A stretch of DNA of 63,225 nucleotides, filler included, from Intoshia linei (lineage: Eukaryota > Animalia > Orthonectida), in the NCBI GenBank assembly GCA_001642005.1. It is 3 parts of 3 records of this genome, joined end to end, with 100 filler letters (N's around TTAATTAATTAA, not from the genome) between each part and the next. Parts side by side here need not be neighbours in the genome. Positions count along the whole stretch, not along the records: positions 1 to 30,937 come from LWCA01000348.1; 2 more parts are not named here. One strand, 5' to 3'. How positions within the stretch are numbered: position 1 is the first letter of the stretch; every line of letters starts with the position of its first letter. This document shows positions 1 to 29,850 of the stretch, piece after piece. The translations under genes were made by a program, and so were the position numbers. A model generated the notes under the pieces. The model saw only the letters and a program-made list of their open reading frames with translations. It made no database searches and was not told where the DNA came from.

Positions 1-480
1 TATCGCTGTGCACTGAAGCGGTATCAATAACGACGACAACAGGGCTATTGTATTGTTGCTTTCTTTTCTTAAGCAATTCCATTTCTTCCATAATCCATTC
101 TTGTGCACTTTCCTTTCAGAAACTTCCTCTTTTTATTTCGTAGTGGATAAGTCCTACATTGCCAATACAATGTATATTGGCACCCCTTGATCCAGCCGCA
201 ATTGAGGCACAACGCTCACCGCGCTGTAATCTACCTTCCTTTTTTGAAATGTGTAAATTAAAATTAGTTTCATCCATAAACACTATATTTGCATTTTCAG
301 ATTGAAATTGAAGTAACTTTAAAGTAAAATTTCGTCTTTTCTCTTTATTAACAGCATTGTTTTTGCATTTTCAGGTTCATGTCGTATCGTTTTTAGAGTG
401 TATAAAAGATTGTTCAGATGGTGGGAAACCGCAACTTTTGATACAGATAAATTAAATATGAAACGAATGGCATCGACAAG
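1..480 (-). mobile_element. IS630/Tc1-family (DDE_3-type) transposase remnant, frameshifted, runs off the window edge
   Basis: Minus-strand translation gives NIVFMDETNFNLHISKKEGRLQRGERCASIAAGSRGANIHCIG and, after a frameshift, SPVVVVIDTASVHS. These match the first and second catalytic Asp motifs of IS630/Tc1 transposases. Confidence 0.75.
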
Positions 481-1843: not shown

Positions 1844-2137
1844 TTATATTACTCTTTTATTATCGGACTCTCTTTCTTGATAGTTAAACCAAAATTTCTT
1901 TTCATTTGAATTCTCAAAGTAACGTTTGGTTTGGATATTAAAAAACGCTACTTTGACATGATCATAGTAACTAGCATCATGAATAACATTCATACTTAAG
2001 GTGTTATGGTTTTGTACGTAAAATTCGTACAGGTTCGAATCGTATATCCATTCGCTTCTATCGATTTCGATCTTTAGTTGGAAATCCTGGCGCCCGTTTT
2101 CCCTAAATTTGTCTAACTGAAATGAAACGTTATACAT
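1844..2137 (-). CDS. Hypothetical 97-aa ORF, no recognisable motif
   Basis: ATG-initiated, stop-terminated ORF, slightly more GC-rich than its flanks, with a hydrophilic composition. No homology recognised. Confidence 0.3.
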   Translation of the reverse strand: MYNVSFQLDKFRENGRQDFQLKIEIDRSEWIYDSNLYEFYVQNHNTLSMNVIHDASYYDHVKVAFFNIQTKRYFENSNEKKFWFNYQERESDNKRVI

Positions 2138-2488
2138 TTTAAATCACTTTAATTTTTAAATTACTTTAAATGGAGTAAATTTTAATTACTATGTAATTAA
2201 AATGAAAAACAAGTTATGAAATTTTTAAAAAAAAATACCGTTAGGTCTTTAATAACGCTAAAATAAACTGTAAACCTTTAATCAAAAAAAAATTTATATA
2301 CAAAGGTACCAAATTTATATGTGTTAAATTAAGTGTTTGTATAATGTAGATGTATATATCTGAAAATTTGTAACAAATCATTACTTTAATGATAAATGAT
2401 CGTTGTGAAATTTTCTCCCGAATAATAATAGTCTTAAGCATGACTTTATAGAACCATAATGCCAATATTATTATAATTCATATTTTAG

Positions 2489-6677: not shown

Positions 6678-9381
6678 AAATGGTACGATTCTAAATTTAC
6701 TTGGAATCCAAAAAAATTTTGCAACATTACTAAAATTTACGTCCCATCAAGTGAAATTTGACTCCCAGATATTGTTTTATATAATAGTGCAGATGGAAAT
6801 TTTTCAGTTAAAGCTATAACTAAAGCTATAATTTCACATACAGGAAAAGTTGTGTGGTATATTTTCAATATTATTGCACCGTTATTGTGAGATGTATCTT
6901 AGGTGTATATTTCATTTTATCTTATGAGAAAATTGATTTAAATTTGGTAGACTTGCGTAGCAATAAAAAAAATTTCGAAGAAATGAATTATATAGATTTT
7001 CACCCATATTTCTTTATTGAAATTGTAGGATCAATGTTTACATTTTCATTTTTTATTTTAATCAAAATATTTGAAAAATATTGGTTAATAATATATTAGA
7101 AACTATTTTTCACTGGGAATTCGTAGATTTCTGGGGTTGAAATTTTGTAATTATATCAACTGGAATAAGCTCTATCAGAATAATTTTTTTTTTAATTTTC
7201 GGACCACTAATTATTTCACATTTTTTGTTTTAATAAAATATTTCGGAAAAAAATATATGAAAATTAAATGCTTTTTTTGACCGTGAAGTCGTCACTTATT
7301 CAGATTGAAATGTTTTGTGTGTGTTAACAGGATATAACTGTACCACCTGTAAATTTTTTTAAATTCTAGGTCTGTTTTTATAATAAAAAAAAGGTAATTT
7401 GTGGTTTTGACCATGAAGATATATTTTTTTAAATTCTCCAACTCGTTTGATTTTTAAAAAAAGGACAATTGGGGTTTTTGACCCGTAAGATGTGAGTTTG
7501 GGAGGTTGAAATTTATTTATTATATGCCCCGAAAAAAACTGTAATTGAAACGTGGTCTTTAAAAAATTCTAAGAGTGGTAGTTATTTCAATAAAGTTTTT
7601 GACCCGTAAGATGTGAAATTGGGAGGTTGAAATTTATCTTATTATACGGTTTTTGACCCTTAAGATGTGAAATTGGGAGGTTGAAATTTATCTTATTATA
7701 CGCGGAAAAAACTGTAATTGAAACGTGGATTTATAAAAATCTAAGACTGGTAAGAACTGGTAGTTATTGAAATAAAGTGGAACACACACAAAAAAAGATT
7801 GCGTAGGATATATATAAGTAAGGATGTTAATATTACATAAAAATTTCAACAATCAAATTGAAGGAATTTGACTGTATTACTATGTGAAATGGTAATTATA
7901 TGAAAAAAACGTATTTTTCTCTTCATTTTCAAACGCATGAATATTTTTTAGGAAGCCACCAATGGTTTTGCGAAGTTTGTGCTCAATTGATGTTGAATTT
8001 TTTCCGTTTGACAGTCAAGACTATCAATTAAAACTTGGTTCTTGGACATATGATGGCTTTTCTATTGATGTGAAACATTAAAAATTTAAAGATCCATCAA
8101 AATGACTTGGAAATTATTAAAAATAGAGTCGATTTGTTTGACTATACTTTAAATTCTGAATGGGATTTGTTATCTGTACCAGCTCAAAAATATAATAATT
8201 ATTATCCTTGCTGTATCGAACCATATCCAGATATCACGTATGTTTAGTTTACATCTTGTATTAGTGCACCAAGCAAAAATTAAAAACTAGCTATACATGT
8301 ATATAATTTCAGAGTCAGTATCATCATTTTTTTGTACCGAAACACCTTTTTTTTTTAAATTGGCAAGTCTTTGAAAAATGTATATAATGTTAATAAATTT
8401 AAAAACTATATTGGATATTTTCAGTAAGAACCTAACAAATATAAAATATTTTGAATTGCTTCCTAATGCGCCAATCGAAAAAAAGTTTGAAGCACTGATA
8501 TAAGAGTATACCATTGGAACCTTAATATGGATATCAAATTTAATTTTTTATTTAGAATACATCTAATTTTACGCAGAAAGTCTTTATTCTATACAATAAA
8601 CATGATGATATTATGTATGGCAATTTGTTTTGTAACAGTTTTAATATTTTACCTGTCAGCCAATTGTAAAGAGAAAATAACAATGGGGATAACGATTTTA
8701 AATTGTTTAAATATATTTCTACTACTGGTGTCTGACATAATACCTCCAACTTCATTATCTACCCCTTTAATTTGTAGATATCTATTATTTTTAATTATAT
8801 TAGTAACATTCTCGATAATATTGACAGTTTTCATATTCAATATTCACTTTAGATCTTCAATTCTGCTGGTAATGCCCACATAGATGAAATTTATATTTTT
8901 TAAAATTGCACCAAAATTATTATTTATGAATCAATTTAAAAGTAAAAGTATCGACAAAGAAATACTATTTGGCTATTCTGACATTAATTATCGAAAATGT
9001 GAAAATGATCAAATTAAATCATAAAAATATGTCGGATAGTGAACTTTGCAAGACTGAATATTTAGAAAAAAGACACACGGCATATAAATGCATTATTAGA
9101 GAAATTATTAATGATTTCAGCAGTATTTGTAACAATATCATGCAAGATAATCTGCATTTACAGGTACATTTACGGTATTGTGCATTTTTATCATTTTTTT
9201 TAAAAAATTATTATATTTTTTCGTTATTTTAAATTTTTAGTTATTGAAAGAATGGCGATTTGTATCTTTGCTAATGGATCGTTTTTTTCTAGTGATATTT
9301 TCGGTGGTCAGTTTAGGAGGAACACTTTTTATAATCTTAAGAGCTCCAAGTTTATACGATCACACAAAACCATTAGGATAG
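6678..9381 (+). pseudogene. Nicotinic acetylcholine receptor alpha subunit, disrupted (exons 6678-6856, 7952-8237, 8556-9163, 9241-9381; 5' exons missing or degraded)
   Basis: Motifs: [44 protein letters not shown], loop C YYPCCIEPYPDIT (vicinal Cys = alpha), LRRKSLFY-M1-M3, and EWRFVSLLMDRFFL...APSLYD. Lesions: TGA at a conserved Trp (~6759), second Cys-loop Cys changed to Tyr, TAA plus frameshift at ~8079-8100, TAG at the Trp position 8881-8883, and a frameshift in the M3-M4 loop. Confidence 0.88.
6955..7824 (-). mobile_element. Non-autonomous Helitron-like repeat copy (5' part) in the nAChR intron
   Basis: Shares long blocks (gaattatatagattttcacccat, gacccgtaagatgtga..gggaggttgaaattta, acacacac) with the copies at 12.9, 32.0, 41.2 and 58.0 kb. 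Ends in ...atataagtaagga|t, i.e. A|TCCTTACTTATAT on the minus strand. Has an internal tandem duplication at ~7480-7700. Confidence 0.7.
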
Positions 9382-9934
9382 TTTCCATTGCAATTTGCAA
9401 TCATAGCCATAGGTAACAATTTGAAATCAACTTGTTAATCCTAAATAAAATGTACTAATTACTTTGATTTTAATCGCACCTCATTATAGAAATCGCACTA
9501 GACATGAGATAATCAGTTGTAGAATGGTATCGATAACAGCGTGATGAAGAGAATTTTATTTGTCAGCTTATGGCTACACTCATGTTTACATATTTCTTCA
9601 TGCTCAAGGCATTGTAAAATAAATGTCAACAATTAGCTATAATTAGTTAAAGACTTAAGATAAATTAACAGGCTAATAAATGTTAATTTCATCAAATGAA
9701 CTATTTTTTGAAAAATTATACAGCTCGTTACGTATTATTCGTAACAATTTAACACACTTGATATGTATTGAATGGCAATTAATCAGATTTGTGTACATTT
9801 AAATACATTTTAGCGCATTTAATTGGACAACATTGTCAAATTAATAATGATTATACATGTATAGTAATGTATACAATACATAATATTATGATGAATTATT
9901 ATTAATATCTTCAATATAATTACAATCACTTTAT

Positions 9935-9953
9935 CACAAGATTAGTCTTCATT
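9935..9953 (+). promoter_or_regulatory. Conserved 19-bp upstream element of homeobox copy 1 (CACAAGATTAGTCTTCATT)
   Basis: Identical 19-mer also at 11972-11990 and 15855-15873, 60-65 nt upstream of each ATG. Contains AGATTA (TAATCT on the minus strand) and an Inr-like TTAGTC. Confidence 0.65.
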
Positions 9954-9999
9954 CTTATAATTTTTCACTTACTGTAACATTAATAAGTGATATTTTAAC

Positions 10000-10572
10000 A
10001 TGTTGAATTTTAATGTGTCGTCCATTCTAAAAGACGATGTAAAATCATCGGACAAGGATACTTCAAAGGTAACAACTCCAGTCATGTCAGATAAAATAGT
10101 CATGTTTAATATTTGTATATGGAATTTGAATGAACGGTTTCTCAGAGAGTTTAAAAAAGAAAAATTGAATGGTAATAAATTTTTAACTTTTTCTTATAAA
10201 TTAGATGGTAATTTCAATGACTGGTCAAAAAACTATTTTGAAAGACTTGCAGATTTAAAAAAACAAACCATGCCTATTACTCGACGAAGAACTGCTTTTA
10301 CTGAACAACAGATTATGATTCTGGAAAAAAAATTTTTGATTGAACAATATCCTTCCATATATACTAGACAAGATTTGAACGCACAATTAAGTCTCCCGAT
10401 ACCAACTATACAAGTAAATTAATTTGAATTTCTACTATAATTTCTTTTTAACATAATTTAATATTAAAATTAGATTTGGTTTAAAAATAGAAGAGCTAAA
10501 GAAAGAAAAATGCATCCAGAACAAGAATCTAAAAATTCGTCGTCAATTGAAGATGAAATACTTGTTGTTTAA
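10000..10572 (+). CDS. Divergent PRD-class K50 homeobox protein, copy 1 (exons 10000-10171, 10205-10413, 10474-10572)
   Basis: Homeodomain TRRRRTAFTEQQIMILEKKFLIEQYPSIYTRQDLNAQLSLPIPTIQ|IWFKNRRAKERK. Intron between homeodomain codons 46/47 (PRD-class position), Lys at position 50, N-terminal eh1-like FNVSSIL, C-terminal EDEILVV*, AATAAA downstream. Confidence 0.9.
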
Positions 10573-10891
10573 TTTATATCATCGTTTATTTGTTAAGATG
10601 AATAAAGCTATTCATTCATTTATTATAACAATTTTTCGTATCGATATTTTTGAATCGTTATATAATTCAATCTTGCCGTGTATTATTGGTTTCATCGTGT
10701 TGGTTGAATAGTAGAATTTTGTAATTGTTTTTATCATTGAATTTTGCGTCTTCTCGACGCAATGAATATTATAGAAATTTAATCGTAAATTATATTATTA
10801 ATTTTAAGTTTAAATAAATATTTATAATTACAAATGTATAGAGTTGAATGTAAATTTAATATTTACAATGTATGTTATAAATTAAATAATG

Positions 10892-11100
10892 GCGCCCAAA
10901 TTGAGACAGGTAATATTTTTGAATTTACCATGATTATTGGTCAAATTAATAAAATTATAATCATTAATAATTGCGCCCAAATTGAAACAGGTAATATTTT
11001 TAAATCAACCATGGTTATTAGTCAAATTAATAAAATTATAATCATTTATAATTGTACCCAACTTGAAACGGGTATATTTTTAAATTAACCATGATTATTA
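10892..11100. repeat. 81-nt tandem repeat (~2.6 units)
   Basis: Units start gcgcccaaattga at 10892 and 10973 and gtacccaacttga at 11054. A related array with a shared upstream flank lies at ~18040-18310. Confidence 0.8.
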
Positions 11101-11234
11101 TTTTTAAAATAGATGATATAGGTAAAATCATATATAAATTTATGATAAAACCATAAATTGAATTGAATACATAAATATTCTCAGCAATAATCTCCAAATT
11201 TCCTCTAAATGATGAAATTATCTGACAATGTTTC

Positions 11235-11365
11235 TAATAGGACGGTGCTTCTTGTCATACAAGCAGACTTTTGAAGAAATATTTCCTAAATAATAATATA
11301 AAAGTATTGACATGGGTTGCTCAAAATCTTGCTCCTAATCAAATTGAAACGTTATGGGAAGATTA
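11235..11365 (+). mobile_element. Short Tc1 transposase remnant between homeobox copies 1 and 2
   Basis: Translates DGASCHTSRLLKKYFLNNNIKVLTWVAQNLAPNQIETLWED*, matching the Tc1 QDNAPCH...WPxQSPDLNPIENLW region. Confidence 0.75.
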
Positions 11366-12036
11366 ACATTAGGGAAAGAAACCCTACAAATATATTGAAG
11401 CATAAAGAAATGTTAATGCAACTTGAATTTGCAAACATAGCAAAAAGAAAAATCTTGAAACCAATTTGTTAATCCTAAATAACGTACTAATTAAAATTTG
11501 TACTTGAATTTTAATCGCACGGTGCGATTCGCACCTCATTATATAAATCGCACTAGAAACGAGATTATCAGTTGTTGAATGGTATTAATAACAGAATGAT
11601 GAAGATAAATTTATTTATCAGCTTGTAATGTTTACATTTTTATTCATGCTAAGACGTTGTAAAATAAACGTCAACAATTAGCTATGATTAGTTAAAGACG
11701 TAAGATAAATTAACTGACTAATAAATGTTAATTTCATCAAATGAACCATTTTTTGAAACATTATTCAGTTCATTACGTACTATTCATAACAATTAACACA
11801 TGTATTGAGTGGCAATTAATCAGATTTGTGTACATTTAAATACATTTTAGCGCATTTAATTGGACAACATTGTCAAATTAATAATGATTATACATGTATA
11901 GTAATGTATACAATACATAATATTATGATGCGTTATTATTAATATCTTCAATATAATTACGATCACTTTATCACAAGATTAGTCTTCATTTTTACAATTT
12001 TTCACTTACTGTAACATTAATAAGTGATATTTTAAC

Positions 12037-12635
12037 ATGTTAAATTTTAACATGTCGTCTATTCTAAAAGACGATGTAAAATTATCGGACAAGGATACTT
12101 CAAATGTTACAACTTCAGTCATGTCAGACAAACTAGTCATGTTTAATATTTGCATATGGAATTTGAACGAAAGATTTCTTAGAGAATTTAAGAGAAAAAA
12201 ATTGAATGGTAATAAATTTTTAACTTTTTCTTATAAATTAGATGGTAATTTCAATGACTGGTCAAAAAACTATTTAAAAAAACAAACCATGCCTATTACT
12301 CGAAGAAGAACTGCTTTTACTGAACAACAGATTACGATTCTGGAAAAAAAATTTTTGATTGAACAATATCCTTCCATATGTACTAGACAAGATTTAAGCA
12401 GAAAATTAAGTCTCCCGATTCCAACTATACAAGTAACTTAATCTAAAATTCTACTGCATTGTCTTATACAATGTATATAAACACATACAATTTGTATATG
12501 TATAATGTCTTGTTAATACTTTAATATTAACATTAGATTTGGTTTAAAAATAGAAGAGCTAAAGAAAGAAAAATGAATCCAGAACAAGAATCTAAACATT
12601 CGTCGGAAATTGAAGATGAAATAATTTTTGTTTAA
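12037..12635 (+). CDS. Divergent PRD-class K50 homeobox protein, copy 2 (exons 12037-12208, 12242-12432, 12537-12635)
   Basis: Near-identical paralog of copy 1 with the same exon structure and WFKNRRAKERK. Has an in-frame 18-nt deletion (FERLAD) just before the homeodomain. Upstream ~600 nt also duplicated. Confidence 0.9.
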
Positions 12636-12849
12636 TTTATATCATTATTAATTTTTTGTAATATTAATTTGTTAAGATTAATAAATCCATTCATTCATTA
12701 AATTTTGAACAAATTCATCAAAAACAAATTTTATCATTTTATCAAATACAATGTGCTAGGTATTCATTACATGTCTTGTATGTATTTATTACAAAAGAGA
12801 AGATGGTTCAGTAATACTGAACAAATACATTGGGTATTTTAACTAATTA

Positions 12850-13778
12850 GATAATATATATTCAGTACCAATTTAATAAATAATGAAAATACCAATTATG
12901 TATCAATAGTTAACGGAATCAGCCCTTTAGAAACATTTCAGTTGATTTTACCAATATTGCAAAGCATATTAATAAATACAAAAATGATGATAACAAAGTA
13001 TTATTAATTTTAGTAATTCGTTGTTTTAGTTTTAATTTAAATTTTAAACGAAATGTTTTGAAAATGAGAATTTGATAATCAAAAATTGCGAAAAAATTAA
13101 TTATATAGATTTTCGCCCATATTTCTTTATTGGAAATGTGTGGATGATCCATATTTACATTTTCAATTTTTATTTTACAGTTATTTTATGTTAATCGAAA
13201 TATTTGAAAAATATTGGTTGATAATATATTAAAAATTATTTTTCACCCGGGAATGCGTAGATTTTTGGGGTTAAAATTTTGTATTTTATCAATTGGAATA
13301 AGCTCCATCAGAATAATCTTCTTTTTTTTAATTTTCGAACCGTTAATTATTTTACATTTTTTGTTTTACATGTTAATAAAATATTTCGGAAAAAAATATA
13401 TGAAAACTAAAATGCTTTTTTGACCATGAAGCGTCACTTATTCAGATTAAAATTTTTTTATTTGTTAACAGGATACAACGGTACCACCTGTAATTTTTTT
13501 AAATTAAAGGGCTGTTTTCATTAAGAAAAAGGGTAATTTAGGGTTTTCGCTCTGAATATATATTTTTTTTAAATTCTCAAACTCGTTTGATTTTCAAAAA
13601 AAAGGACAATTGGGATTTTTGACCCGTAAGATATGAATTTGGGAGGTTGAAATTTATTTTGTTAACACCCCGGAAAAAACTGTAATTGAAATGTTTTTTT
13701 ATAAAATTTTAAGACTAGTAATTATTGAAATAAACGATAACACACACAGACAAACAAAACATATTATATAAGTAAGGA
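12850..13778 (-). mobile_element. Non-autonomous Helitron-like repeat copy
   Basis: Same family as 6955-7824; terminates in atattatataagtaagga|t. Confidence 0.7.
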
Positions 13779-15914
13779 TATAAATTCTGAGATAGTTTTT
13801 AAAATCATAAAAATTATCATAAATCTGTATCCAAAAAAAGTGCTTTCATAATTCAAACCGCAGATTACGATTTTATAATAACTTTTTTTATGGTAAAAGT
13901 TTTATAAAAGATATAGAATTTAAAAAAATAAAGTATCGGACAATTTTTAAAATCTTAAGTAAATATGTATATTTCTGCGATTGAAATTTGAGTTAAAATA
14001 TAAGGTAAAAAATATGTTAGAATTAGTTTTCTAAATACATGGTTATCCAGTGGGTAACCTAATATTCAAATGCAACCAAGTAAAGATTTATACACGTATA
14101 AATATTTTTTACGTTAATGTGCAAATCAATATGTTAATTTTGTTCAACAAATTAAATCTTAATCCTTAGTCAATTTTAATGGAGATTATGTAAATTTCTC
14201 AGCATAAGATTATACTGTTTTTGTATGTTAATCTTATATTAATAATGAATGTCAATACGTCACGTTAATTAATAATTATACATACTTATAGTACGTAATT
14301 AGATAAGTATCAAATTTTTGCATTTCATTTATATAGTTTTGCATATAACGTATATACTGTGTACAAAGTAGACGGTGTACCATGTAGATTAATTTTTGGG
14401 GTATGATTTCTACTGAAAATTAACCATTAACTAAAACGTTTCACAAATATCTTAATATCCTTATTCGTGTAAGGCAGTGGTTGCAAAATTTTAGTTTCAG
14501 CTATATCTAGGCAAATATAAATATATATAATATCTAAATATATCTAATATAATATAATCTATATTTAAATAAAAAATAAGAGTTAACCTTTGAAAAATAT
14601 TTTACAAAAAGTTATTTTTTAATTGTTTCAAGATGCAGAATATTTCAATATATATCTGAAAAAGTGTCACAATATATAACCCACTTTGATAGTACTTTAT
14701 TCTGTTTTTTCATAAAATTGAAAATAAATCTAATACCTCGAAAATGTTTAAAAGTTTTCAAAAATCGATGTTTCTCAATTTATCACCCACTAATAATGCA
14801 TTGCAATGGTTTGAATTTTTTTCATATCGTAATTATTATATTACATATGGGTAAAGGTAGCCTTCCAATTGTGAAATTTTTATCCTACCTGCTCGAACAA
14901 TTTAAAAAACTTGACATAAACTATTGCAACGTCCAATGCATTGAAGAAAAATTTAATCAACGTCGTTAAATTAGGATTAATATAAATTATAAAATATAAT
15001 CTAAATACAGTACATCTAAATAATATAAAATGTGAATTGATGAAAAATCGTTTAAAATTAATAATGGGTATTGAAATTTTAAATATAAAACTAAAAAAAA
15101 TCGATATTTAAGTTTCATTCCAATGTTGAGTTATTTGATGAATGTACATTTGAATATATACAAACGATTTTTTTTGTGATTATAATTATCCAATTATTTA
15201 TAAAATTGTTAGGAAATATGATTACTACAAGTTCTCTTAATTATCGATGAAATTTAAATAAACTACCAAAACTAGATTATTTTGGGTTAAAACTGATCGG
15301 TAAAGTCAATAATCGTTTGTATAATCACTTAAATCATACAACAATTACATATAAAATACAGTGACTACTAATTTTAATGTTACCTAATCTTATTAATCTT
15401 ACTTGAAACGCGAAAATTATAAATACATAAATTATGTATTTAATGGTGAGATAATAAGAATATTTAGTCATTAATCAGAGTCTCTGAAATGATTTATGCT
15501 CAAGGCAAAAATTAGATGAATGGCCATAATTACAGATAATTATAAAAATTGTAAGAGAAATTAATTGACTAATAAATGATAGTACATAATAGTTGACATA
15601 AACAAATTTTTACAAGAGTATTATTAAAATCATTACAATTAAACAATACTTAGTCTTGAGCAGAATGACGAGATTTGTAATCATTTTGTTTCATTGATAT
15701 CAACACTTCTATATTTGATCAATTGAGCATTTGATAGGTTTAAATTTAAATTAATTGCAACTTATATAGTGCTATATATCAACAGTATAATGGATATTAT
15801 TAGCTAAGCCGATTTTAGTTAATGTATTCAATAAGTAATTACAATTAATTTTTCCACAAGATTAGTCTTCATTCTTACAGTTTAAATCTTATCGTAACAT
15901 CAATATATCATAAC

Positions 15915-16531
15915 ATGATAAATTTTAACGTGTCGTCTATTCTTAGACAAAAAGAAAAATCACCCATTAAGGAGAGCCTATTACCTTCAAGTTCCAAAAC
16001 CACTACTACAATGTCGTTAGACAAATTCACCATTTTTAGTATTTGTAAATGGAATTTGAACGAACAATTTTTGCGAGAATTTCAAAGAGATAAATTGAAA
16101 GGTACTATATTTTTAATATTATCCATCAATTTAGATAACAATTTGAAAGAATGGTCAAAAAATTACAGTGAAAAGCTTTCTGAATTAAAAAAACACAATA
16201 TACTCAATACTCGACGAAGAACTGCTTTTACTGAAAAGCAGGTTAACATTCTAGAACAAAAATTCTTGATCGGTCAATATCCTGCCATATGTACAAAACA
16301 AGAATTGAGTTCAAAATTAAATCTCCCGGTATCAACTATACAGGTACAACTTTAAATTCAATAAAGTACTTTTTGTAATACAAATGTAACAAAATTTAAT
16401 ATTACCATTAGATATGGTTCAAAAATAGAAGAGCTAAAGAACGAAAAATAAACCCTGAACATAAATATAAAGATTCATCAGAAATCTCACAAGATTCAAA
16501 TCAAAATTTAAGAAATTTGAAAATGATTTAA
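15915..16531 (+). CDS. Divergent PRD-class K50 homeobox protein, copy 3 (exons 15915-16101, 16135-16343, 16412-16531)
   Basis: MINFNVSSIL...TRRRTAFTEKQVNILEQKFLIGQYPAICTKQELSSKLNLPVSTIQ|IWFKNRRAKERK. Same intron positions as copies 1 and 2, but more diverged with a different C-terminus. Confidence 0.9.
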
Positions 16532-16592: not shown

Positions 16593-19500
16593 TTAAATAT
16601 TATATTTGGTGAAATGCGCATTTGCAATCGATTCCGTTTCTTTAATCTAAACATGATAATACATTATAATGTTTACATGTTATGTATTTAATCAAATTTA
16701 CAGACGATTATGAAATGGAAACTTACATTTTTCTCAACGTGAAACTCCATTGCTTCGTTCAATGTACTTTTTAATTCATCAATATGTTGTTGATTTGATT
16801 CCTGTACTATTGCTAGTTTCTGAAACTTGTCAATAATCGGCTTTAAAACCGATACAAATTTTGAAACTAGTTTTTGACATTTTCCTCCTAAAAGTTTTAA
16901 TTTTTCAGATTCACCGATTGACGATAATCCAAATCTGTTTTCCAAAGAATTAACTTCCAATTTTAGTAAAACGTTTTTAAATGTGTAAATATCATCCTTT
17001 ACAAGTGTCACATTTGTTTCAGCTAACTAAATATTAATGCTATACATAATTTATAATTGAGATTATGTAAATTACTTAGTATAACATAATATTGTTTCGA
17101 AGTTAATCCAATAGGTATCAATTTTTAGCACGTCAGGTTATTTAAATATTTAATGTACTCTTAATGGTTATATGGGTCATTTTATTTAAATAAATACAAA
17201 CTACAAAATGTACGTATGTACAATGTACATTGTATAAATAATGTAAACATTATCAAAATAGTTTATTATATTAACACAATATACTTACTTGATCAGTTTT
17301 TTGAGATACAAATTCAATATATTTTCCTAATGCAATAACAAATCTAAATTGATAAATACATATATACATTAATTATATCTTAAATATATAATTACTTTCG
17401 ATGAGTTAAATGTATAGAATTGAACTTTTCATTTTCAATTTTGATATCATTAGTAGATTCAATCAATGAATGATATTTGTTTCTGATATTTTCACTGTCA
17501 GTTTTTAGCTTATTAACTTGCTTAAATTGAAAAATAAATTAAATAATTGTCAATTAATAAGTGTAAATTAAAATGATAACCTTTTCCAATATCAAATTAG
17601 AATTCAAACAGGTCTGTAATTCTTGTTGACATTTTTCATAATTCTCAATTAATTTATTTTGTTTTGTATTTTCCAACTTGAATAAATTTTGAACTTTACT
17701 TTCTCGTTCGAAAGCTTGTTCTAATTCTCGTTGTAAGCATTCAGTTTGGATTTTAGGGATACAATTTTCAACCTAAAAATATAAAACACATATATTTTTA
17801 ACACAAACCTCTTTTGATAATAAATTTATTTTAGTTTGGTAATTTTTAATTTGTTTTTTGCTTTTAGACAATTTTTGTTTGTCAATTTCATGGAATTTCA
17901 GTTTTTCAGATAATTTACGAATGATGTTTTGCATTTCCAGTATTGTTGCAAAAGATTCTTTGAGAATTTTTAAAAAAGTCTATAAAAGTATAATACATTT
18001 ATTTGATTTAATTAATGAATAATATTATAATATTACAAATTATATCGTAAATTGTATTATTACTTTTATAATATTAAAAGTTTAAATTTAATTTAATTTA
18101 ATTAAAATTACCAAATGTATCGAGTTAAAAAGAGAGTTCAATGTAAATTTAAAATGTACAAAGTATACAATAAATTAAATAATTCCGCCAAATTAGGGAC
18201 AGGTAATATTTTTGAATTTACCATAATTATTAATCAAATTAATAATTGCGCCCAAATTGAAACAGGTAATATTTTTAAATTTACTATGATTATTAGTCAA
18301 ATTAATAAACAAGAAATTCATGACTGAATAAAAACTTTAGTAATTCTCATAATTGGGTAATTTTGATAATTAATTTTACGATTAAGAAAATTGATGTAAA
18401 TCATACCTGATCATTGCGTATATACTTTGTTAAATGGACATTTGGTGGGATAATTTGTGTTTCAATAAATTTGATCAAAATATTCATAATTTCATTTGAA
18501 TTGCATTCTCCTACATGTATGTATATAAAAATGATCAATACATGTATATAAAAAATATACTCGATTCTAGCTGTTTTACTATCGGTTCAATATTTGAAAT
18601 TATTAAGGAAGAATTACAAGGAATACTTATTAAATCCTTTTGAATACCATCTAAATCAGATAAAATTTTTATTATAATAAATTACCCTTATTTAATCTAA
18701 TATAACCATTTTGAACTCTGAATAATTTTTTAGATTTATACTCAATTTTTGACTTGTCAGATACCATTCTACCAAGTCTATTAATACAAATAATAACTTG
18801 AACTGCAATTTTGAATTTTCGAATAATTTGAATTGAAATTTTCCGAGAAATTAGTTTTTCAAATAGAGTGGCATGTTTTGTGGGTAATATTATACTACTA
18901 GTATATATTAAAATTTTACTGAATTGACTAAAAAAATTACTTGTTTCCATCATGGAATTTATACTTTTTCCCGAAAGCAATGATACAGGCATTTACATCT
19001 TTAGTTAATTCAGATGATTGAATCAAACACTTTTTGGGGAAAGCACAAGTGGAAGAAAAGATTGATATTTGTTTAAGAAAAGATTGAATTATATAAGACA
19101 GAAACCCTACAATTATTACCATCGATTTATTGGTATTTTCAATTGATTTTATATTTGATTCATTGCTTTTTTTTACATTATTTAGTCTTTCTTGATTCTT
19201 TAAGCTTATATTCAACGTTTTTTTCAATTTTTCTTTTTCGATATTAATTGTCTGAAATTAGAAATTTTCAAATAATGCAAAAAAAATTAATTAATGATTT
19301 TACCTTTAAATTCGCTTGATATCCATCAATTTCTTTTTGGTTTTTGTTAATTAAATGTTCCAATTCAATCTGTCTGTTATTTTTATTTTCTCGTATAATT
19401 TTTTTATGTGAATTTAAACGATTAGACATTTCAACTGAAGATTTTTCTAAAAATTCATCCTTCTTTTTAAGTAAACCATTCAATGATTGTATTTTTTCTT

Positions 19501-22500: not shown

Positions 22501-25500
22501 TTGGTCACTAATAGTGACTAATTATCCCTAACTTTTATATTTGGGTACTAGTTTGACCCTGACATATCAAGGACTAGAATTTTTAAAATGGAAAATATAA
22601 CCGCATTCAATGAAATATGAACATTGTTATAAAAAATCGGACGATAGCGTCTTATTTAGCGGTATTATGTACTAACAGAGCACTACGATATCACTTGTCG
22701 TTCTCAACGGCGTTTTAATTGATCATTAAAATTTAATAGATTTAAAATAAATAAATACCTCCATGTTTTTTTCTTCAAGCCTTTTCTGCATTATACTGTA
22801 GTGTTCACGTATACACTCGATATATGTCGACATGGTAGAAATTTCTAAACAATTTATAAAAAAGTTATAAAAAAAGTTATAAAAAATTTTAAGTTTTAAA
22901 AAAAATATTAACATTATTCTTACATAATTACGTTAATTACATTAATAAACGTCAAAACATAGTGTTTGCAAAATAAAAATTTTTAATTATTCTAATAAAA
23001 GACAAAATTCTTGTTTTCAACTTTAATGATCTCAAATTAACTCAACTAAAAACTAATAACAAAATCATGATTTATAGTTTAATTTGGAGTCAAAATTAAA
23101 AAAAAATAATGCAGATCTTAATTTTTTAAAATGCAATCTTTATCTGTCAATGAGTAAAAACTTTATCATCCCTCATACGGTATGAATCGTAATATAAATC
23201 TCGCTGTATTGTATAATGAATTATTTTTAAATATACCAAGATTTTTTGGTATATTATCAATTCTAAGAGAACTAGCTAATGAGATCAAATTTGTTTTGGT
23301 AGAATTTATATCGTCTTCCATTGTTTTCGTTTTTTTTTTTAGTTTCAATAAATCAAATTTATTGTGTAATAATAGTTTATCAATTCTAGCCTTTTCTATA
23401 GTTGATTCCTTTGCATCAGACTCATATTTTGAATATTTATCATCCCTTTGTCGTTGCAACGAAATTATTTTATTTTGCAAGCTAAATTATTTAATTTTTA
23501 TTGGGTAATTTTATTTATAAACTCTAACGTTAATGACTTTGAGAACTGCTAAATGATTTCACTATTCGGGTAAATGGAAATTTTTTCAAACACCTTAATT
23601 ATTTATGTTGGTCACATTCTTTATTTTAACAATTGACGTTGGATGACAGAAATTAGCTATATCATTATTATTCTATATATACCATACTAGTGTTTCTCAA
23701 ACTGTGGTAAGAGGACCCTGGGCGCTAGGCCATAGGGCGTGTTTCAAATTTTTAGATTTTTGAATTAAAATAAATTTAAAAAAAATTAATTAATTTAACT
23801 TAATTTTACTCGAGTCAGCTTTCGGCTTTCTCGATTATACCTGCTAACTATTATCAACTTGTTGTGTTAAATAAACCGTGACAATTCAACACCAGACAAA
23901 ATTTATACATTATCTTATGTAACCCATTTGAAAAACCCTGACGCATACGAATAGCGTAAGCTAATCGTTTATCAAAAAATTCGATATAAATGTTGAAATG
24001 TAAGCAAAGCTAAACCTAGCATACCGAAACTACTCTTCGGGCTTGAACCAAATTTTTATAAAATGGGTCCTCGTTTTTCGCAAATAAGTACATGTATTTA
24101 AAAAAATTATGTTTTTGAATACAAAAACATTTTTCTTATATTTAAACTGTCAAATCAAGACAAGAAAGGTGACTGTGTTTCAGAAAATTTTTGCTGTCTA
24201 TTTTACATTTTCAGTATCTTCCAGCATGGCGGGTTCGGCTCTGATGTTATCTTTTAAATAGCTTTCTGAAATAATTAACCTTTTATTTTTTTCAGTTTTG
24301 ACTACATTTTGTTTTTTGGTTATTTCTATAATTTCGTTCATTTTTCTATATTATAAAAATTATTGATATTTTATGTTTAAGTAAATTTTTATTATTTTGG
24401 TTCTTTGTATATGAAAATACAACCAATAATAATGTGGTATATAACAAATTTAAAGTCAATTACTCTAATTTATCTTTATCTTGCTGTAAATTTTTCGTTT
24501 TTTCTTGATAGTTTTCTTGTTTTATTTGATTTAATTGGTTTATTTTAATCTAAACTTAAAATAAATTATGTACATGTAATTCATTAAGTCATTATAATTA
24601 TCAATTATAAAACTTGCATTTAATTGTTCATTATTCTTTAATATTTCTTCAATTTCGTTATTTAGTTTTTTTATATTTTTTGTTTTATTTTCATTCTCTA
24701 TTACTGCCAACTAAGTGTGTCAATTAATATTTTAAAGGAAAATATATTATAATGGTGATGCCTTTTATACTGTTGTTGTAAATATTACTTTTTTATCTTT
24801 TTCAAGTTCAAAAATTGTGTTTTTCAGTTTTTTGATTAGATCTAAACTTGTATCTAACTGCATTTTTTGTTCATTGTATTGAACTAAATGGATACATGAA
24901 TTAATTTTTTTATTTTAATAATTCTGGATAAATTTAAACTAATCAAAATGGACATCAAATGTATATTATATGTTATTTATTTTTTAACGTCAGAGTAATA
25001 ATAATAGTAATAGTAAAAGCTATTTTAAACCAACTTTAACTCGTATTTTATAGGTGAGCGTTATTATTTGGAATTGCATTTTTAAAATTAGACTCTCAAA
25101 TGATAGAAATTCATAATCACTGTAACTTCAAACTAGAGTAAACATAGAGTGAACCCATTAAAATCAAATGCAGTATTAAGATTTATTGTTGAAAAACAAA
25201 CAGTTAATTAGTTGAAACCAGAGATTGAATTTTGGCGTAGTTAGCGTCGTACTTCAAATTTTGTGACGACCCATAGGTTAAGAAAGTTGGATCTAGTGCA
25301 TGCTCATTTGGAGAAATAATTTTAATTTATTAAATAACGAGAATATTCTTAAACCCAACCATTTTTACTAAAAATCAAAATTTACCAACTTTTAAGGGAA
25401 AAATCCACTTTTACAAACCTCTAAGAAAAAATCCCAATTTTATCAACCCTTATGGGAAAACCCACTTTTACCAACCAATGAATGTATATTACTATATATA

Positions 25501-27544
25501 AATATTTATTTACTAATTTATCATTTTTACAAATAAGCGGATGTATATTAATTTACAAACCAAATGTTGATCAATTAAAAATTTTCTAAAAAAAAATGCT
25601 ACCACGTTTTCGATGTACCTGGTGAAAAAAAAGAAAGATTGGATGTAATTGATTTGCCGTTGAAAATACTTAGAAAGAGAGGAAGACCAATAAAAACATC
25701 TAATAAAGCAAATAAAAAATATTTCAAGGACAGAAAAATGCATAATTAATAATTTTTTTTTATTTTGTTTAAAAAAGTTTTCTTTGTTTCATCATCAGTT
25801 TAAGTAAATATTAAAACGTTTATAACTTGTTTATCGCTAATCTTTCTATTTGAGAACTTCTATTTGTTTTGTTTGTGATATTGAGTTTTTATGGGATACT
25901 CCGCAATTATGTAAAACTAAATTTTTTTCTTAAAGGTTAGTAAAACTATAATTTTCCTTTTAGGGTTGGTAAAACTGGAATTTTTCCTTTAAGGGTTGGT
26001 AAAACTGCATTTTTCCCTTAAAGGTTGGTAAAACTAGAATTTTCTTTAAAGGGTTTTTAAAACCGAATCTTTCCTTTTAGAGTTGGTAAAACTGGATTTT
26101 AGTAAAAATGGTGGAATTTAAATAGACACCCTTAAATAACTATTGATTTAATTTAACTAATAGATAAGTTCACTTTAAAAAGATGATAAAATTTGAAAAT
26201 TGTGAATTTCAAGCTTTCAAAAGTGAAATTTTTGCTTTTAATTTCGAAATAGTCTCGTAAGGGTTAAAAGAATATAAATTTCAAAATTTTATTTAGTTAA
26301 TAGTATTGGTAAATGGTAATTTGAGTGTTTACGTAAGCGCTTCTGATCATGAAAAAACGGTAATTTTTGTTCTCTTGCGACTGTTTAAGTTATTAAAATG
26401 CTCGACCAGTAACGGATTAATCCGTCCCTACTGTACTGCATTTTAGATATTTTTAAATTAAATTTACCTTGATAAATTTTTATTTTATTGGACAATTTGT
26501 TGCAATTACTAAAAAATTAAAATTTTTTTTTATAAATATATACTTTGTGATTTTTATTATCGATTCCTCGTAAACAAGTTTTTCTTCATTTATTTTATCA
26601 AATTTTTCATTAAGATTTTTAATTATTTCTTCCTATTCAATTTCATTTAATTTTTATTTTAATACATGAAAACTTCAATTAAGAGGTACCAACAAACCTG
26701 AGTAAGAATACGGACAAAAACATTAACAAAACGTATCAAATGTAGTGAAAAACAAAACACGTCTCCATTACAGAACTGAACCTACCCTACCCTAGACACC
26801 GAAATTCAAAAATAAAATTAAAAAAATTGATTTAGCCTGATGCTTTCAGTGCTGTAGGTTCGTCTCTACTTCAATAGTCTAGCCACAAGTAGAAAATAAT
26901 GTTCCAGGGATATATGCCAGTCTTAACCGAAGTATACTTAGATCTAATATTTTGGTACAATATTGTAATCCTATAATCCTATTAATAATGTAATAATCCT
27001 ATTACTCCGATTGAAGAAAAATAAGGTTAAATGACACAATTAAAAAAGGTGAAAATCATTGCAATTCAATTTAGATCAATAAAAAAATTCATTAAATTTT
27101 ACTCTACCGTGTACTAAAATCTTCACACAATACTACACTGTAGTACCTTTTCATTTTTATCAAACTGTAAAGAACTAATCTTCATTTCATACTGAACATT
27201 TGAAAATTCGTGTTGAATATTATTTTGATTTAATTGATTAGAAATAGAATCTAATTTACCTAAAAAAAATAGAAAAATGAAAAAAAAAAAAAAAACTATT
27301 AGCATTATTTCTAATATGATTGATATAATTTTCTTTTTTAATAATAAGTTGATTATATTTTTGTAAACGAATTTTTTGTTGAGCATTAAAAGTTTCCAAT
27401 TCCATTCGTTTAACATTACTTTTTTCCATTTCATCTCTTAAATGTTCAAAATGGGAAGGAGATTTATGCTAAAAATGATTAAATCGCAAGTTTAATAAAT
27501 TATACATCAAATTCGGAAACAGTTTGATATACTTTAGAATCCAT
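16593..27544 (-). CDS. CCDC171: Multi-exon long coiled-coil protein, CCDC171-like (may be more than one gene)
   Basis: Many minus-strand heptad-rich exons (ORFs at 27123, 23166, 21052, 19268, 18937, 18672, 16688). The hydrophobic segment SMVIIVGFLSYIIQSFLKQISIFSS followed by IRKFKIAVQVIICINRL resembles, from memory, CCDC171 SLLAACALMAGALYPL...IRIFRKGVIAVLAANRL. Putative start MDSKVYQ at 27544; last exon IKETESIANAHFTKYNI* ends at 16593. Confidence 0.6.
18040..18310. repeat. Second copy of the 10.8-11.1 kb repeat, here with a ~63-nt period, intronic
   Basis: Shares atcgtaaatt(g/a)tattatta...aaatgtat..gagtt...aatgtaaattta and the cccaaattgaaacaggtaatattttt units. Confidence 0.7.
20323..21095 (-). 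mobile_element. Internally deleted hAT (Buster/SCAND3-like) element
   Basis: TIRs cagggggttcccaaa / tttgggaaccactg; 8-bp TSD ttacatat / tcacatat (7 of 8 match). Carries the C-terminal dimerisation region LITFPSSYLAERAFSNVINLLTNNRNRLQI. Confidence 0.8.
25339..26131. mobile_element. Non-autonomous Mutator/foldback-like element with long modular inverted repeats
   Basis: Perfect 9-bp TSD ttaaataac (25330-25338 and 26132-26140); G...C termini. ~29-nt units (ttttaccaacc..taagggaaaaatcc) are in tandem on the left and inverted on the right. Confidence 0.8.
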
Positions 27545-27702: not shown

Positions 27703-29850
27703 CTACAAAGGTTCACATGCTCGACATACACGAACAGATTTGTTGTGAGAAACGAATCGATATGGAGAACAATCATTGCAAAAAACTTTACCACATTTTC
27801 GACAATGATGTTTACGTAGAACTAGCGTAAATTTTTTATCACAATAAAGGCAATTGTCTATAAGATCATCTTCCACCCATTCTGCCTTTTTCTGGGTAAT
27901 TTTACGTTTTGGTTTAATTACATTGCAATTTAGATTTTGAGAATGACTAGAATTGGTTAATGAAGGTTTAATATCAATTCCAGATATTTTTCTAGTATCT
28001 ATATTATTATTTTCACTTAATAAATTGTATTTCAGTTTAACTTGGGCGAGGTGCTGACCCAATTCATTCATAGTTTTTTTCAGTTGAGGGATAACCACAT
28101 CTTCCAATTTATTTTTTTCGTTAATTACGCAAATTAATCTTTTCTTTTGAGCAGTCATCATTTTATTTCTATTTTGATTAATTTCATCAAATTTAGTATG
28201 ATTATTTTTAATTTTTTCAGATAGATAATCTAATTTCAATTCTAAATTTTCAAAATTTTCCTCCAATTGTTTCAATTTGGCTTTATTATTATTGATAGTT
28301 TTTAATTTGATGGTCAGTTCTTTTTGGAATTTAAGTTTGTCATTTTTTAAACTTGCAACTTGTTCCATAAGTTGAGTACGGTTTGATTCAACCATGTCGA
28401 ATACTTTTAAGCGTCTATCTGTAGATTGTTTTTCTTTTAATAGTTCAGATTTACTTTCTTGTAATTGATCAATTAAATTGTCTTTAATGTGAATTTCTTC
28501 AATGTAAGCACTTATTGCTGCTTTCGTAGCTTTATATGAAGTGTCTCTATCTCCTTTTTTTGAGTTTTCAATTACTGAATCAACTACAGCACAATTTTCT
28601 TTATTTAAATTATCTTGACTGTTTATTTTCTGAATAATACCCATTTTTGTGTTGTAAAGTTCAATGCTCATTTTATCTTTTGAATTTTTTATTTTTGTCA
28701 GTTCTTCATTTAACGTTTTAAATTGTTCTTTTAATGTTGATTTTTCATTGTTCAATGTCATGATTCTAGTTTTTAATTTTGTCACATCATCGCTATTGTA
28801 TTCTACAACGCCTTCTGAATTAGAGTCTGAATTTTTAAGATTCAAATTTTGATAAATTTTTTTTTGCATAGTTAAACTACCAACTCGATTCATCAGTTCA
28901 AGGTAATTTATAGGTAGAGTTATTTTTTTCAGCAATAAATTGAGATTTTCCAATTTTGTGTAATTAAACTCGAATCTAAATTATAAATTACTTTTTCATC
29001 TATAAATAATGTCCATAAAATCAAGTTGAAAAAAATTTCCTCTTACAAATTTTCACAAAAAATGCTAAATTTGTTAAATCCCTTTAAAATATGATTAAAT
29101 CTTATCGAATTGTGAAACATTGACACGTATGAACATTTTTCATTGAACGAGAGAAAATAAAACTCAATATTATTTAAAGAAATGAGATTCCCACAAAATT
29201 CATCATAGTATCTTGAAAAAAAGAAACTATTTGCATTGAAATATTTCTTTGAAATATCATTGTACTTTCCGATTTGTAACATGAGATCTGATAACCACTT
29301 CTTTTCAATACACTGCATAAACAACAACCTCAATCGTGTATCACCCGTAATGCTATTAGATTTTGATTTCAACTAAAATACATGTAATTATAAAGACAAA
29401 AATATACATTAGATTTATCAATCAGATATGACACTAGGCATGTTTCTTGTCTATCATTAGAATTATTTATGGGTTCTTCGACAATGCCTATAGATTCGTC
29501 AATATCATTGAGAATACTAACTATTTCAAATGCTTCTTTTCTACAACTAGCATCAATGTCTTCACACATTCTAGATAGAAATTCTGAAAAGGGCTGCCAC
29601 ATAGCTTCATTAGATTTAGTTGACTTTAAACTTCGCATTATAATGTACTCTATAATGTCTATCACTGATTGGCAATCTTCAATGTTGGAATTGTCGTGGC
29701 CCACATTACTTACCACAATCTTTATTGATTCACGAATTGCAAAAATATAATTTCCGTGGATTATTTCATTTCTTAAATTATCCTTTGTGGCTTCACGCAT
29801 TTTCAAGTTTAAAGGACTACCACAATATATATATTTAGTAATAAAGTTTT
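27703..29850 (-). CDS. RUN domain - coiled coil - FYVE zinc finger protein (RUFY/FYCO1-like); 5' end uncertain
   Basis: C-terminal FYVE WVEDD..CLYC..KF...RKHHCRKCGKVFCNDCS...RVCRAC. RUN-like GDTRLRLLFMQCIEKKWLSD...KYFNANSFF...GNLISLNNIEF. Long coiled coil in the 416-aa ORF. Confidence 0.85.

What the first reader, a model, noticed from the sequence alone, without database searches (positions are those of the whole stretch)
9395..16531. Tandem triplet of an unassignable PRD-class K50 homeobox gene with an eh1-like repressor motif
Seen: three co-oriented, intact three-exon genes with WFKNRRAKERK (K50), an intron at homeodomain codon 46/47, N-terminal FN(V/M)SSIL and a shared non-homeodomain block (FNICIWNLNERFLREF...WSKNY). 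Copies 1 and 2 are a recent ~1.2 kb duplication (~9395-10625 vs ~11428-12700); copy 3 is older. Known: K50 plus this intron marks Otx/Pitx/Gsc/Dmbx-type genes, and Gsc has an N-terminal eh1 (Groucho-binding) motif. Inference: the helices do not fit any of these families by eye, so this may be a lineage-specific, fast-evolving expansion of repressors, analogous to the Crx-derived ETCHbox genes of mammals. Expansion in a compact genome would be notable.
Basis: partly seen in the sequence, partly recalled or inferred. Interest (0 to 1): 0.8.

Follow-up and report, generated by a model that had tools for sequence, protein, structure and literature searches.

The report
Tripled, diverged Dmbx-like homeobox gene
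The tiny parasitic worm Intoshia linei, known for losing developmental genes, carries three side-by-side, fast-evolving copies of a gene-switching homeobox gene, most likely its version of the known gene Dmbx; this is an interesting local duplication, not a new kind of gene.

Summary
The window is from the orthonectid Intoshia linei; the genes are annotated hypothetical proteins A3Q56_03241-03243. All three are intact, three-exon PRD-class K50 homeobox genes under purifying selection (dN/dS 0.29-0.41). Public contigs show copy 2 spliced at both introns and copy-1 exon 1 spliced. Copies 1 and 2 look like paralogues, not haplotypes.

The homeodomain tree cannot place them (AU p 0.44-0.56 for Dmbx, Otx, Gsc, Pitx). 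Other characters favour Dmbx: A7 with K50, a phase-1 first intron in an Asp codon after (E/D/K)KLx as in coral and bilaterian Dmbx, an ERLAD motif in copy 1, eh1 as in cnidarian Dmbx, and no other Dmbx in an assembly with separate Otx, Gsc-like and Pitx-like genes. The main rival is origin from Gsc.

Likely mechanism (inferred): monomeric binding to TAATCC, since the dimer residues E32 and E42 are lost, with Groucho recruitment through eh1. A conserved ~50-residue block has no detected relative. Odds: Dmbx 55%, Gsc 25%, Otx 8%, unassignable 12%. A lineage-specific variant of a known kind.

The parts
10000..10572 (+). Copy 1 (A3Q56_03241, 159 aa); exons 10000-10171, 10205-10413, 10474-10572
   Evidence: exon-1 letters spliced at intron 1 in run X4
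12037..12635 (+). Copy 2 (A3Q56_03242, 153 aa from first ATG); exons 12037-12208, 12242-12432, 12537-12635; 18-nt in-frame deletion of FERLAD near 12275
   Evidence: spliced contig 11966-12656 in X5
15915..16531 (+). Copy 3 (A3Q56_03243, 171 aa); exons 15915-16101, 16135-16343, 16412-16531; older paralogue
   Evidence: dS about 0.6, dN/dS 0.40-0.41; no run covers 15200-16199, so expression is untested
10009..10029 (+). eh1-like heptapeptide FNVSSIL (copy 2 FNMSSIL at 12046-12066; copy 3 at 15924-15944)
   Evidence: cnidarian Dmbx show FSIDNIL, FSVANIL, FTVEHLL, FMMENLL variants
10090..10275 (+). Conserved pre-homeodomain block (about 50 aa, predicted helical) spanning intron 1; holds EKLN|D at the intron and ERLAD 8 aa before the homeodomain
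   Evidence: dN/dS 0.07-0.30; no significant Pfam, Atlas or representative match; low-confidence helices
10172..10204 (+). Intron 1, 33 nt, phase 1 in an Asp codon (also 12209-12241, 16102-16134)
   Evidence: same phase and similar context in Dmbx genes
10276..10515 (+). K50 PRD-class homeodomain of copy 1, split by intron 2 (10414-10473) at codon 46/47
9392..10620 (+). Duplicated unit 1, including about 600 nt upstream; partner 11426-12699
15493..15905 (+). Two upstream blocks of copy 3 (15493-15581, 15819-15905) still similar to copy 1/2 upstream DNA; candidate cis-elements and 5' UTR

Best explanation
These are the orthonectid's Dmbx genes, diverged on a long branch and tandemly duplicated twice (copy 3 first, then copies 1/2). 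Shown: intact genes, purifying selection, spliced transcripts of copy 2 and copy-1 exon 1. Inferred: the K50 homeodomain keeps R3, R5, W48, F49, N51, R53 and binds TAATCC; loss of E32 and E42, which human Paired-like cooperativity rules call critical, together with R44T makes it bind as a monomer rather than as a P3 dimer; the N-terminal eh1 recruits Groucho/TLE, so the proteins repress targets shared with the animal's Otx proteins, probably in embryos or anterior neural cells. Copy 2's loss of FERLAD may be partial sub-functionalisation.
For: A7 with K50: of 108 K50 homeodomains retrieved, only Dmbx-type ones, the triplet and one copepod protein have it. The triplet also has the Dmbx state at 34, 41, 45, 46, 58. 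Identity of copy 1: Dmbx mean 29/60, Otx 25/60; by hand against oyster sequences printed in PMC5322547's supplement, Dmbx 30, Gsc 26, Otx 26, Pitx 25 of 57. A profile of the triplet scores Dmbx 59-77 bits, Otx 57-68, PDB Gsc 54, Pitx2 49-50. The coral Dmbx gene has three exons with a phase-1 intron at ERLA|D; bilaterian Dmbx loci have EKLA|D, EKIA|D, DRLT|E, DRFT|E; the triplet has EKLN|D, KKLN|D, DKLK|D (5-residue match p <0.001-0.05 over five references). Otx introns lack this context. ERLAD in copy 1: p about 0.01-0.02. Cnidarian Dmbx have eh1. No other Dmbx candidate among the assembly's homeodomain hits. Cooperativity and TAATCC rules: PMC13530268.
Against: Homeodomain trees do not resolve the position; AU p 0.557 Dmbx, 0.441 Otx, 0.533 Pitx, and the free LG tree joins the triplet to Intoshia Gsc at 22/22 support. 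Copy 3 is as close to oyster Otx (29/57) as to Dmbx (28/57). Diagnostic positions and motif windows were chosen after seeing the data. ERLAD-site match in copy 3 is not significant (p 0.23-0.29). There are two candidate sites for one Dmbx motif. Whole pre-homeodomain local alignments to Dmbx are mostly not significant. No clear eh1 in the four bilaterian Dmbx first exons I could read. No annelid Dmbx sequence was available. No binding or repression data.
Confidence: 0.55

Rival explanations
1. The triplet derives from a duplicated Goosecoid. It would work the same way (eh1 repressor on TAATCC), and Dmbx would be lost in this animal.
For: Gsc is the classic eh1 + K50 repressor (own knowledge). 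Intoshia Gsc-like gene on C540 also has eh1 and, in my inferred model, a 34-nt phase-1 intron; its 12 residues around that intron match copies 1/2 (score 24-28, p<0.001). Shared with one or both Intoshia Gsc-like genes: R4, I22, I28, E56, loss of D27 and E32. Weak tree grouping. ESM Atlas nearest clusters include Hesx1/ANF, goosecoid-2 and dharma.
Against: Gsc signature residues I7 and E43/E46 are kept by both Intoshia Gsc-like genes but absent from the triplet, which also lacks canonical Gsc K41. The C540 match fails for copy 3 (p 0.07) and rests on one unverified splice model in K/N-rich sequence. Grouping of long branches at 22% may be attraction; no canonical Gsc was in the tree. PDB Gsc scores below every Dmbx reference.
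Confidence: 0.25
2. The triplet is a divergent Otx offshoot, like Crx-derived ETCHbox genes, that gained eh1.
For: Four Otx-type genes exist in the assembly, so the family is duplicating. I15, I28, D/E33 are Otx states. AU does not reject (p 0.44).
Against: Lacks E4, T7, F29, V34 and Q58; lies outside the starred Otx-containing branch in the mixture-model tree (96/93); Otx first introns lie 5-7 aa before the homeodomain in another context.
Confidence: 0.08
3. An orthonectid-specific K50 family whose parent cannot be recovered (or a Q50 PRD gene that switched to K50), with a newly evolved N-terminal block.
For: No relative above about 32/60 identity in 5.8-billion and 1.84-billion protein searches; the block has no match; near-invariant PRD residues D27, E32, E42, R44 are all replaced.
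Against: Several independent Dmbx characters coincide, and Dmbx is otherwise missing. Oyster members of lophotrochozoan PRD clades that I could read are Q50.
Confidence: 0.12
4. Copies 1 and 2 are uncollapsed haplotypes of one gene.
For: No single contig bridges 10982-11058, an 81-nt repeat; depth cannot be read from contigs; one X4 contig joins copy-1 exon 1 to copy-2 exon 2.
Against: 8% divergence, 14 indels and dS 0.19 against 4 differences in 1149 nt for an allele in X3; flanks on both sides are unrelated; X1 contigs tie copy 1 to the left and copy 2 to the right part of the spacer. The X4 join passes through a 44-nt identical stretch, enough for an assembly chimera.
Confidence: 0.04

Closest known systems
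Dmbx family (coral Desmophyllum Dmbx P0235; oyster, rotifer, amphioxus Dmbx)
   Same: K50 with RTAFT arm, L34/P41/I45/Q46/K58; three exons; phase-1 intron in D/E after (E/D)(K/R)Lx; eh1 as in cnidarian members; multi-copy in some lineages (six in Nematostella).
   Different: Only about 48% homeodomain identity; D27, E32, E42, R44 replaced; ALTLA and IILE parts of the motif not recognisable; new 50-aa block; very short tail, no OAR seen.
Goosecoid (and small eh1 + PRD repressors Hesx1/Anf, zebrafish dharma)
   Same: Small protein, N-terminal eh1, PRD homeodomain (K50 in Gsc); probably works alike as a Groucho-dependent repressor.
   Different: Lacks I7 and the KEERVE signature; two separate Gsc-like genes exist in the assembly; Hesx1 is Q50 and vertebrate-only (own knowledge).
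Otx/Crx and the eutherian ETCHbox genes
   Same: K50, intron 46/47, tandem duplication with rapid divergence as a mode of origin.
   Different: No RRERTTF arm, different first-intron context; parent more likely Dmbx or Gsc.
Lophotrochozoan PRD clades I-VI (Paps et al. 2015, PMC5322547)
   Same: Lineage-restricted, divergent PRD genes in spiralians.
   Different: Oyster members read are Q50 (PRD7 is truncated, PRD2 not seen); clade VI motif SPQQVRS absent.

Membership tests
PRD class | 60-aa homeodomain closest to Paired-like sequences, Q46, intron at codon 46/47 | tested here: met
   (outside ANTP, 100/99)
PRD class | P3 dimer residues E32, E42, R44 | tested here: not met
   Q32, I/V42, T44; conserved in 68, 71, 69 of 72 comparison sequences. 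A functional trait, not required for class membership.
Dmbx | K50 with A7 (RTAF arm) | tested here: met
Dmbx | Supported grouping with Dmbx in a homeodomain tree | tested here: inconclusive
   polytomy; AU p 0.51-0.56
Dmbx | LAERLADIILE-type motif before the homeodomain | tested here: inconclusive
   core only; ERLAD in copy 1 p 0.01-0.02, copy 3 not significant, deleted in copy 2
Dmbx | Phase-1 first intron in the D/E codon of that motif | tested here: met
   EKLN|D, KKLN|D, DKLK|D vs ERLA|D, EKLA|D; 18-24 aa from the homeodomain instead of 11-16
Dmbx | Conserved synteny with annelid Dmbx | not testable with these tools
   no annelid genomes reachable
Gsc | N-terminal eh1 and K50 | tested here: met
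Gsc | I7 and K41-E42-E43-x-x-E46 signature | tested here: not met
   A7, P41, I/V42, P/S43, Q46
Otx | E4, T7, F29, V34, Q58 | tested here: not met
Pitx | H7, I34, R46 | tested here: not met
eh1 repressors | Binds Groucho/TLE and represses | not testable with these tools
   motif only

The most novel reading that the evidence does not exclude
An orthonectid-specific homeobox family with a new conserved protein-interaction block and monomer-only K50 binding, expanded and used in the parasitic plasmodium or its embryos. The fully spliced copy-2 contig comes from run X5, filed under a second organism of the same study, which may be the infected host (inference; names are coded).
Probability: 0.15. 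Interest if true: 0.65.

Novelty: new variant of a known kind. Interest (0 to 1): 0.38.

Why it matters
Orthonectids have one of the smallest animal homeobox sets (PMC6543705), so a retained, expressed triplication runs against the trend of loss. If it is Dmbx, a gene that looks lost by similarity search is in fact present three times, and a short intron-anchored motif rescued the assignment. It also offers a natural test of published Paired-like cooperativity rules. It does not introduce a new mechanism.

Tried and rejected
Word searches with the first two exons and with the homeodomain region returned only the three genes. The 1.84-billion search was swamped by multi-homeodomain proteins and found no relative of the block. 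Pfam, NCBIfam, Rfam and Atlas gave nothing significant for the block or the window's RNA. AlphaFold on three sequences failed (pLDDT 41), so no fold search was run. Family HMM scores favoured Dmbx by 10-14 bits over Otx, but did so for Intoshia Prop, Vsx and Gsc too, so I did not count them. Attempts to fetch canonical Gsc/Pitx sequences failed; those comparisons rest on PDB scores and hand counts. Mikhailov 2016 and Takahashi and Holland 2004 were not held, so I cannot say how the genome paper classified these genes. DUX4 top hits are sums over two domains and were rejected. TAATCC sites at 9436 and 11470 are two of 19 in the window and are not evidence of autoregulation. A bacterial promoter scan was irrelevant.
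Full report
Source. The window is contig C2725 of a 41.6-Mb, 3520-contig assembly. The protein search names the three products hypothetical proteins A3Q56_03241-03243 of Intoshia linei, an orthonectid parasite with short introns and a small homeobox set (PMC6543705).

Observation. Three + strand genes start at 10000, 12037 and 15915 and encode 159, 153 and 171 aa without internal stops. Each has a 33-nt phase-1 intron and a phase-0 intron at homeodomain codon 46/47. The first intron is in frame and stop-free, so it needed proof. Contigs of three public runs skip it exactly, and two also skip intron 2 of copy 2, while DNA run X1 reads through. These runs are not on record as RNA, but exact GT-AG skipping shows spliced transcripts. 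One X4 contig carries 15 differences in exon 1; copies 1 and 2 differ at exactly 15 places there, and the seven listed are copy-1 letters. So copy-1 exon 1 is transcribed; its join to copy-2 exon 2 is an assembly chimera or a recombinant allele. No run, DNA included, covers 15200-16199, so copy 3 is untested. The laid stretch was 10200-16199 because of the 6000-letter limit.

Paralogues and selection. Copies 1 and 2 share 9392-10620 and 11426-12699 at 92% with 14 gaps. An allele in X3 differs at 4 of 1149 sites and the flanks are unrelated, so haplotypes are unlikely, though no single record bridges the 81-nt repeat in the spacer. dN/dS is 0.29 (1 vs 2) and 0.40-0.41 (vs 3), Fisher p 0.001-0.0001; the non-homeodomain block is as constrained as the homeodomain. 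Identical runs of 121 and 75 nt exceed chance (p 0.0007 for the longest), suggesting gene conversion or constraint. No fourth copy was found.

Genome context. Of 72 homeodomain hits, I read four Otx-type genes (K50 seen), two Gsc-like and one Pitx-like gene (helix 3 not retrieved for C1771 and C1887), and Prop, Vsx, Uncx and Pax6 types. None is a conventional Dmbx, and a Dmbx profile finds no further locus. These genome searches give lower bounds.

Family. No close relative exists in the protein collections searched. Among 541 retrieved homeodomains the best single domain is Dmbx-type. Trees make the triplet a 100/100 clade on a long stem inside PRD, without a supported sister; AU tests reject none of Dmbx, Otx or Pitx, and Intoshia Gsc is joined at 22/22.

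Other characters favour Dmbx. A7 with K50 is nearly confined to Dmbx, and positions 34, 41, 45, 46 and 58 agree. Against Otx, at strictly discriminating positions, the count is only four to two. Cnidarian Dmbx proteins have eh1, then a LAERLAD motif, then the homeodomain. The coral gene and four bilaterian Dmbx loci have a phase-1 intron in the D/E of that motif; the triplet's first intron falls in EKLN|D, KKLN|D, DKLK|D. Otx genes have a phase-1 intron too, in another context. Copy 1 also has ERLAD 16 residues further on, deleted in copy 2 between two ATTT repeats. Only one of the two sites, or an internal repeat, can match the Dmbx motif, so they are not independent. All these tests are post hoc.

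The Gsc rival is real. The Gsc-like gene on C540 has eh1 and an inferred 34-nt phase-1 intron whose surroundings match copies 1/2 better over 12 residues than Dmbx does, but not copy 3. Several derived homeodomain states are shared with the Intoshia Gsc-like genes, and bilaterian Dmbx first exons show no clear eh1. Yet the Gsc signature kept by both Intoshia genes is absent from the triplet. I put Dmbx at 0.55, Gsc 0.25, Otx 0.08, unassignable 0.12.

Mechanism. Both leading readings give the same working model. DNA-contact residues are intact and K50 predicts TAATCC; E32 and E42, critical for cooperative P3 binding in human Paired-like proteins (PMC13530268), are Q and I/V, and R44 is T, although these are near-invariant in 72 comparison sequences. 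CRX lacking E42 keeps monomer binding and loses dimer binding (PMC11874979). With eh1 (Groucho binding; own knowledge) this suggests monomeric repressors competing with Otx at K50 sites. dmbx is a neural, posterior-head marker in echinoderms and other deuterostomes (PMC12126913), so a neural or embryonic role is a guess. None of this is shown for these proteins.

Novelty. Known class, annotated genes, common mode of origin; new are the probable Dmbx identity, the triplication in a reduced genome, the predicted loss of cooperativity and an unmatched 50-aa block. Interest 0.38.

Method notes. My own spliced models were searched exon by exon by reference; the joined step was left out, and whole-protein searches used only the database records P0001-P0003. 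Exons were joined only inside scripts for dN/dS, trees and motif tests. One retrieved protein, P0148, has a homeodomain that looks identical to human DUX4; I noticed late, after it had served as a Dux comparison row; it is not in the tree and was not pursued.

Noticed in passing
window 11200-11425: Degenerate Tc1/mariner-type DDE transposase remnant on + (judged by eye from the translation), ending at the left edge of the copy-2 duplication; it may have a part in the duplication.
   Followed up: partly
window 11207-11601: Run X5 has a contig skipping 218 nt with CT..AC ends, i.e. a spliced minus-strand RNA upstream of copy 2; no long ORF. X3 and X4 also cover 11059-12000.
   Followed up: partly
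window 10840-11110 and 18066-18309: Short 63-81-nt tandem repeat family present at two places.
   Followed up: no
window 12800-13999 and about 7060-7850: High-copy dispersed repeat, summed contig depth in the thousands.
   Followed up: no
G000:C2115:26805-30690; C1402; C1802; C1771; C540: Other K50-type families also look duplicated: four Otx-type genes (a tandem pair on C2115, one lacking the 46/47 intron) and two Gsc-like genes.
   Followed up: partly
window 8491-8880 (+); 27706-29848 (-); 1847-2143 (-); 119-370 (-): Neighbours: ligand-gated ion channel transmembrane exon, a FYVE gene with a weak RUN hit, a weak RFX-like hit and a weak DDE_3 fragment.
   Followed up: no
window 25363-26100: 29-nt tandem array with an inverted counterpart about 500 nt upstream; possible small transposon.
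   Followed up: no
P0068 (XP_049518664.1, tick): Named dorsal root ganglia homeobox by its source, but its K50 homeodomain is Dmbx-type and partly duplicated in the model.
   Followed up: partly
window 15200-16199: No contig of any laid run, including the best DNA holder, covers copy 3's 5' part; may be a filter effect.
   Followed up: no
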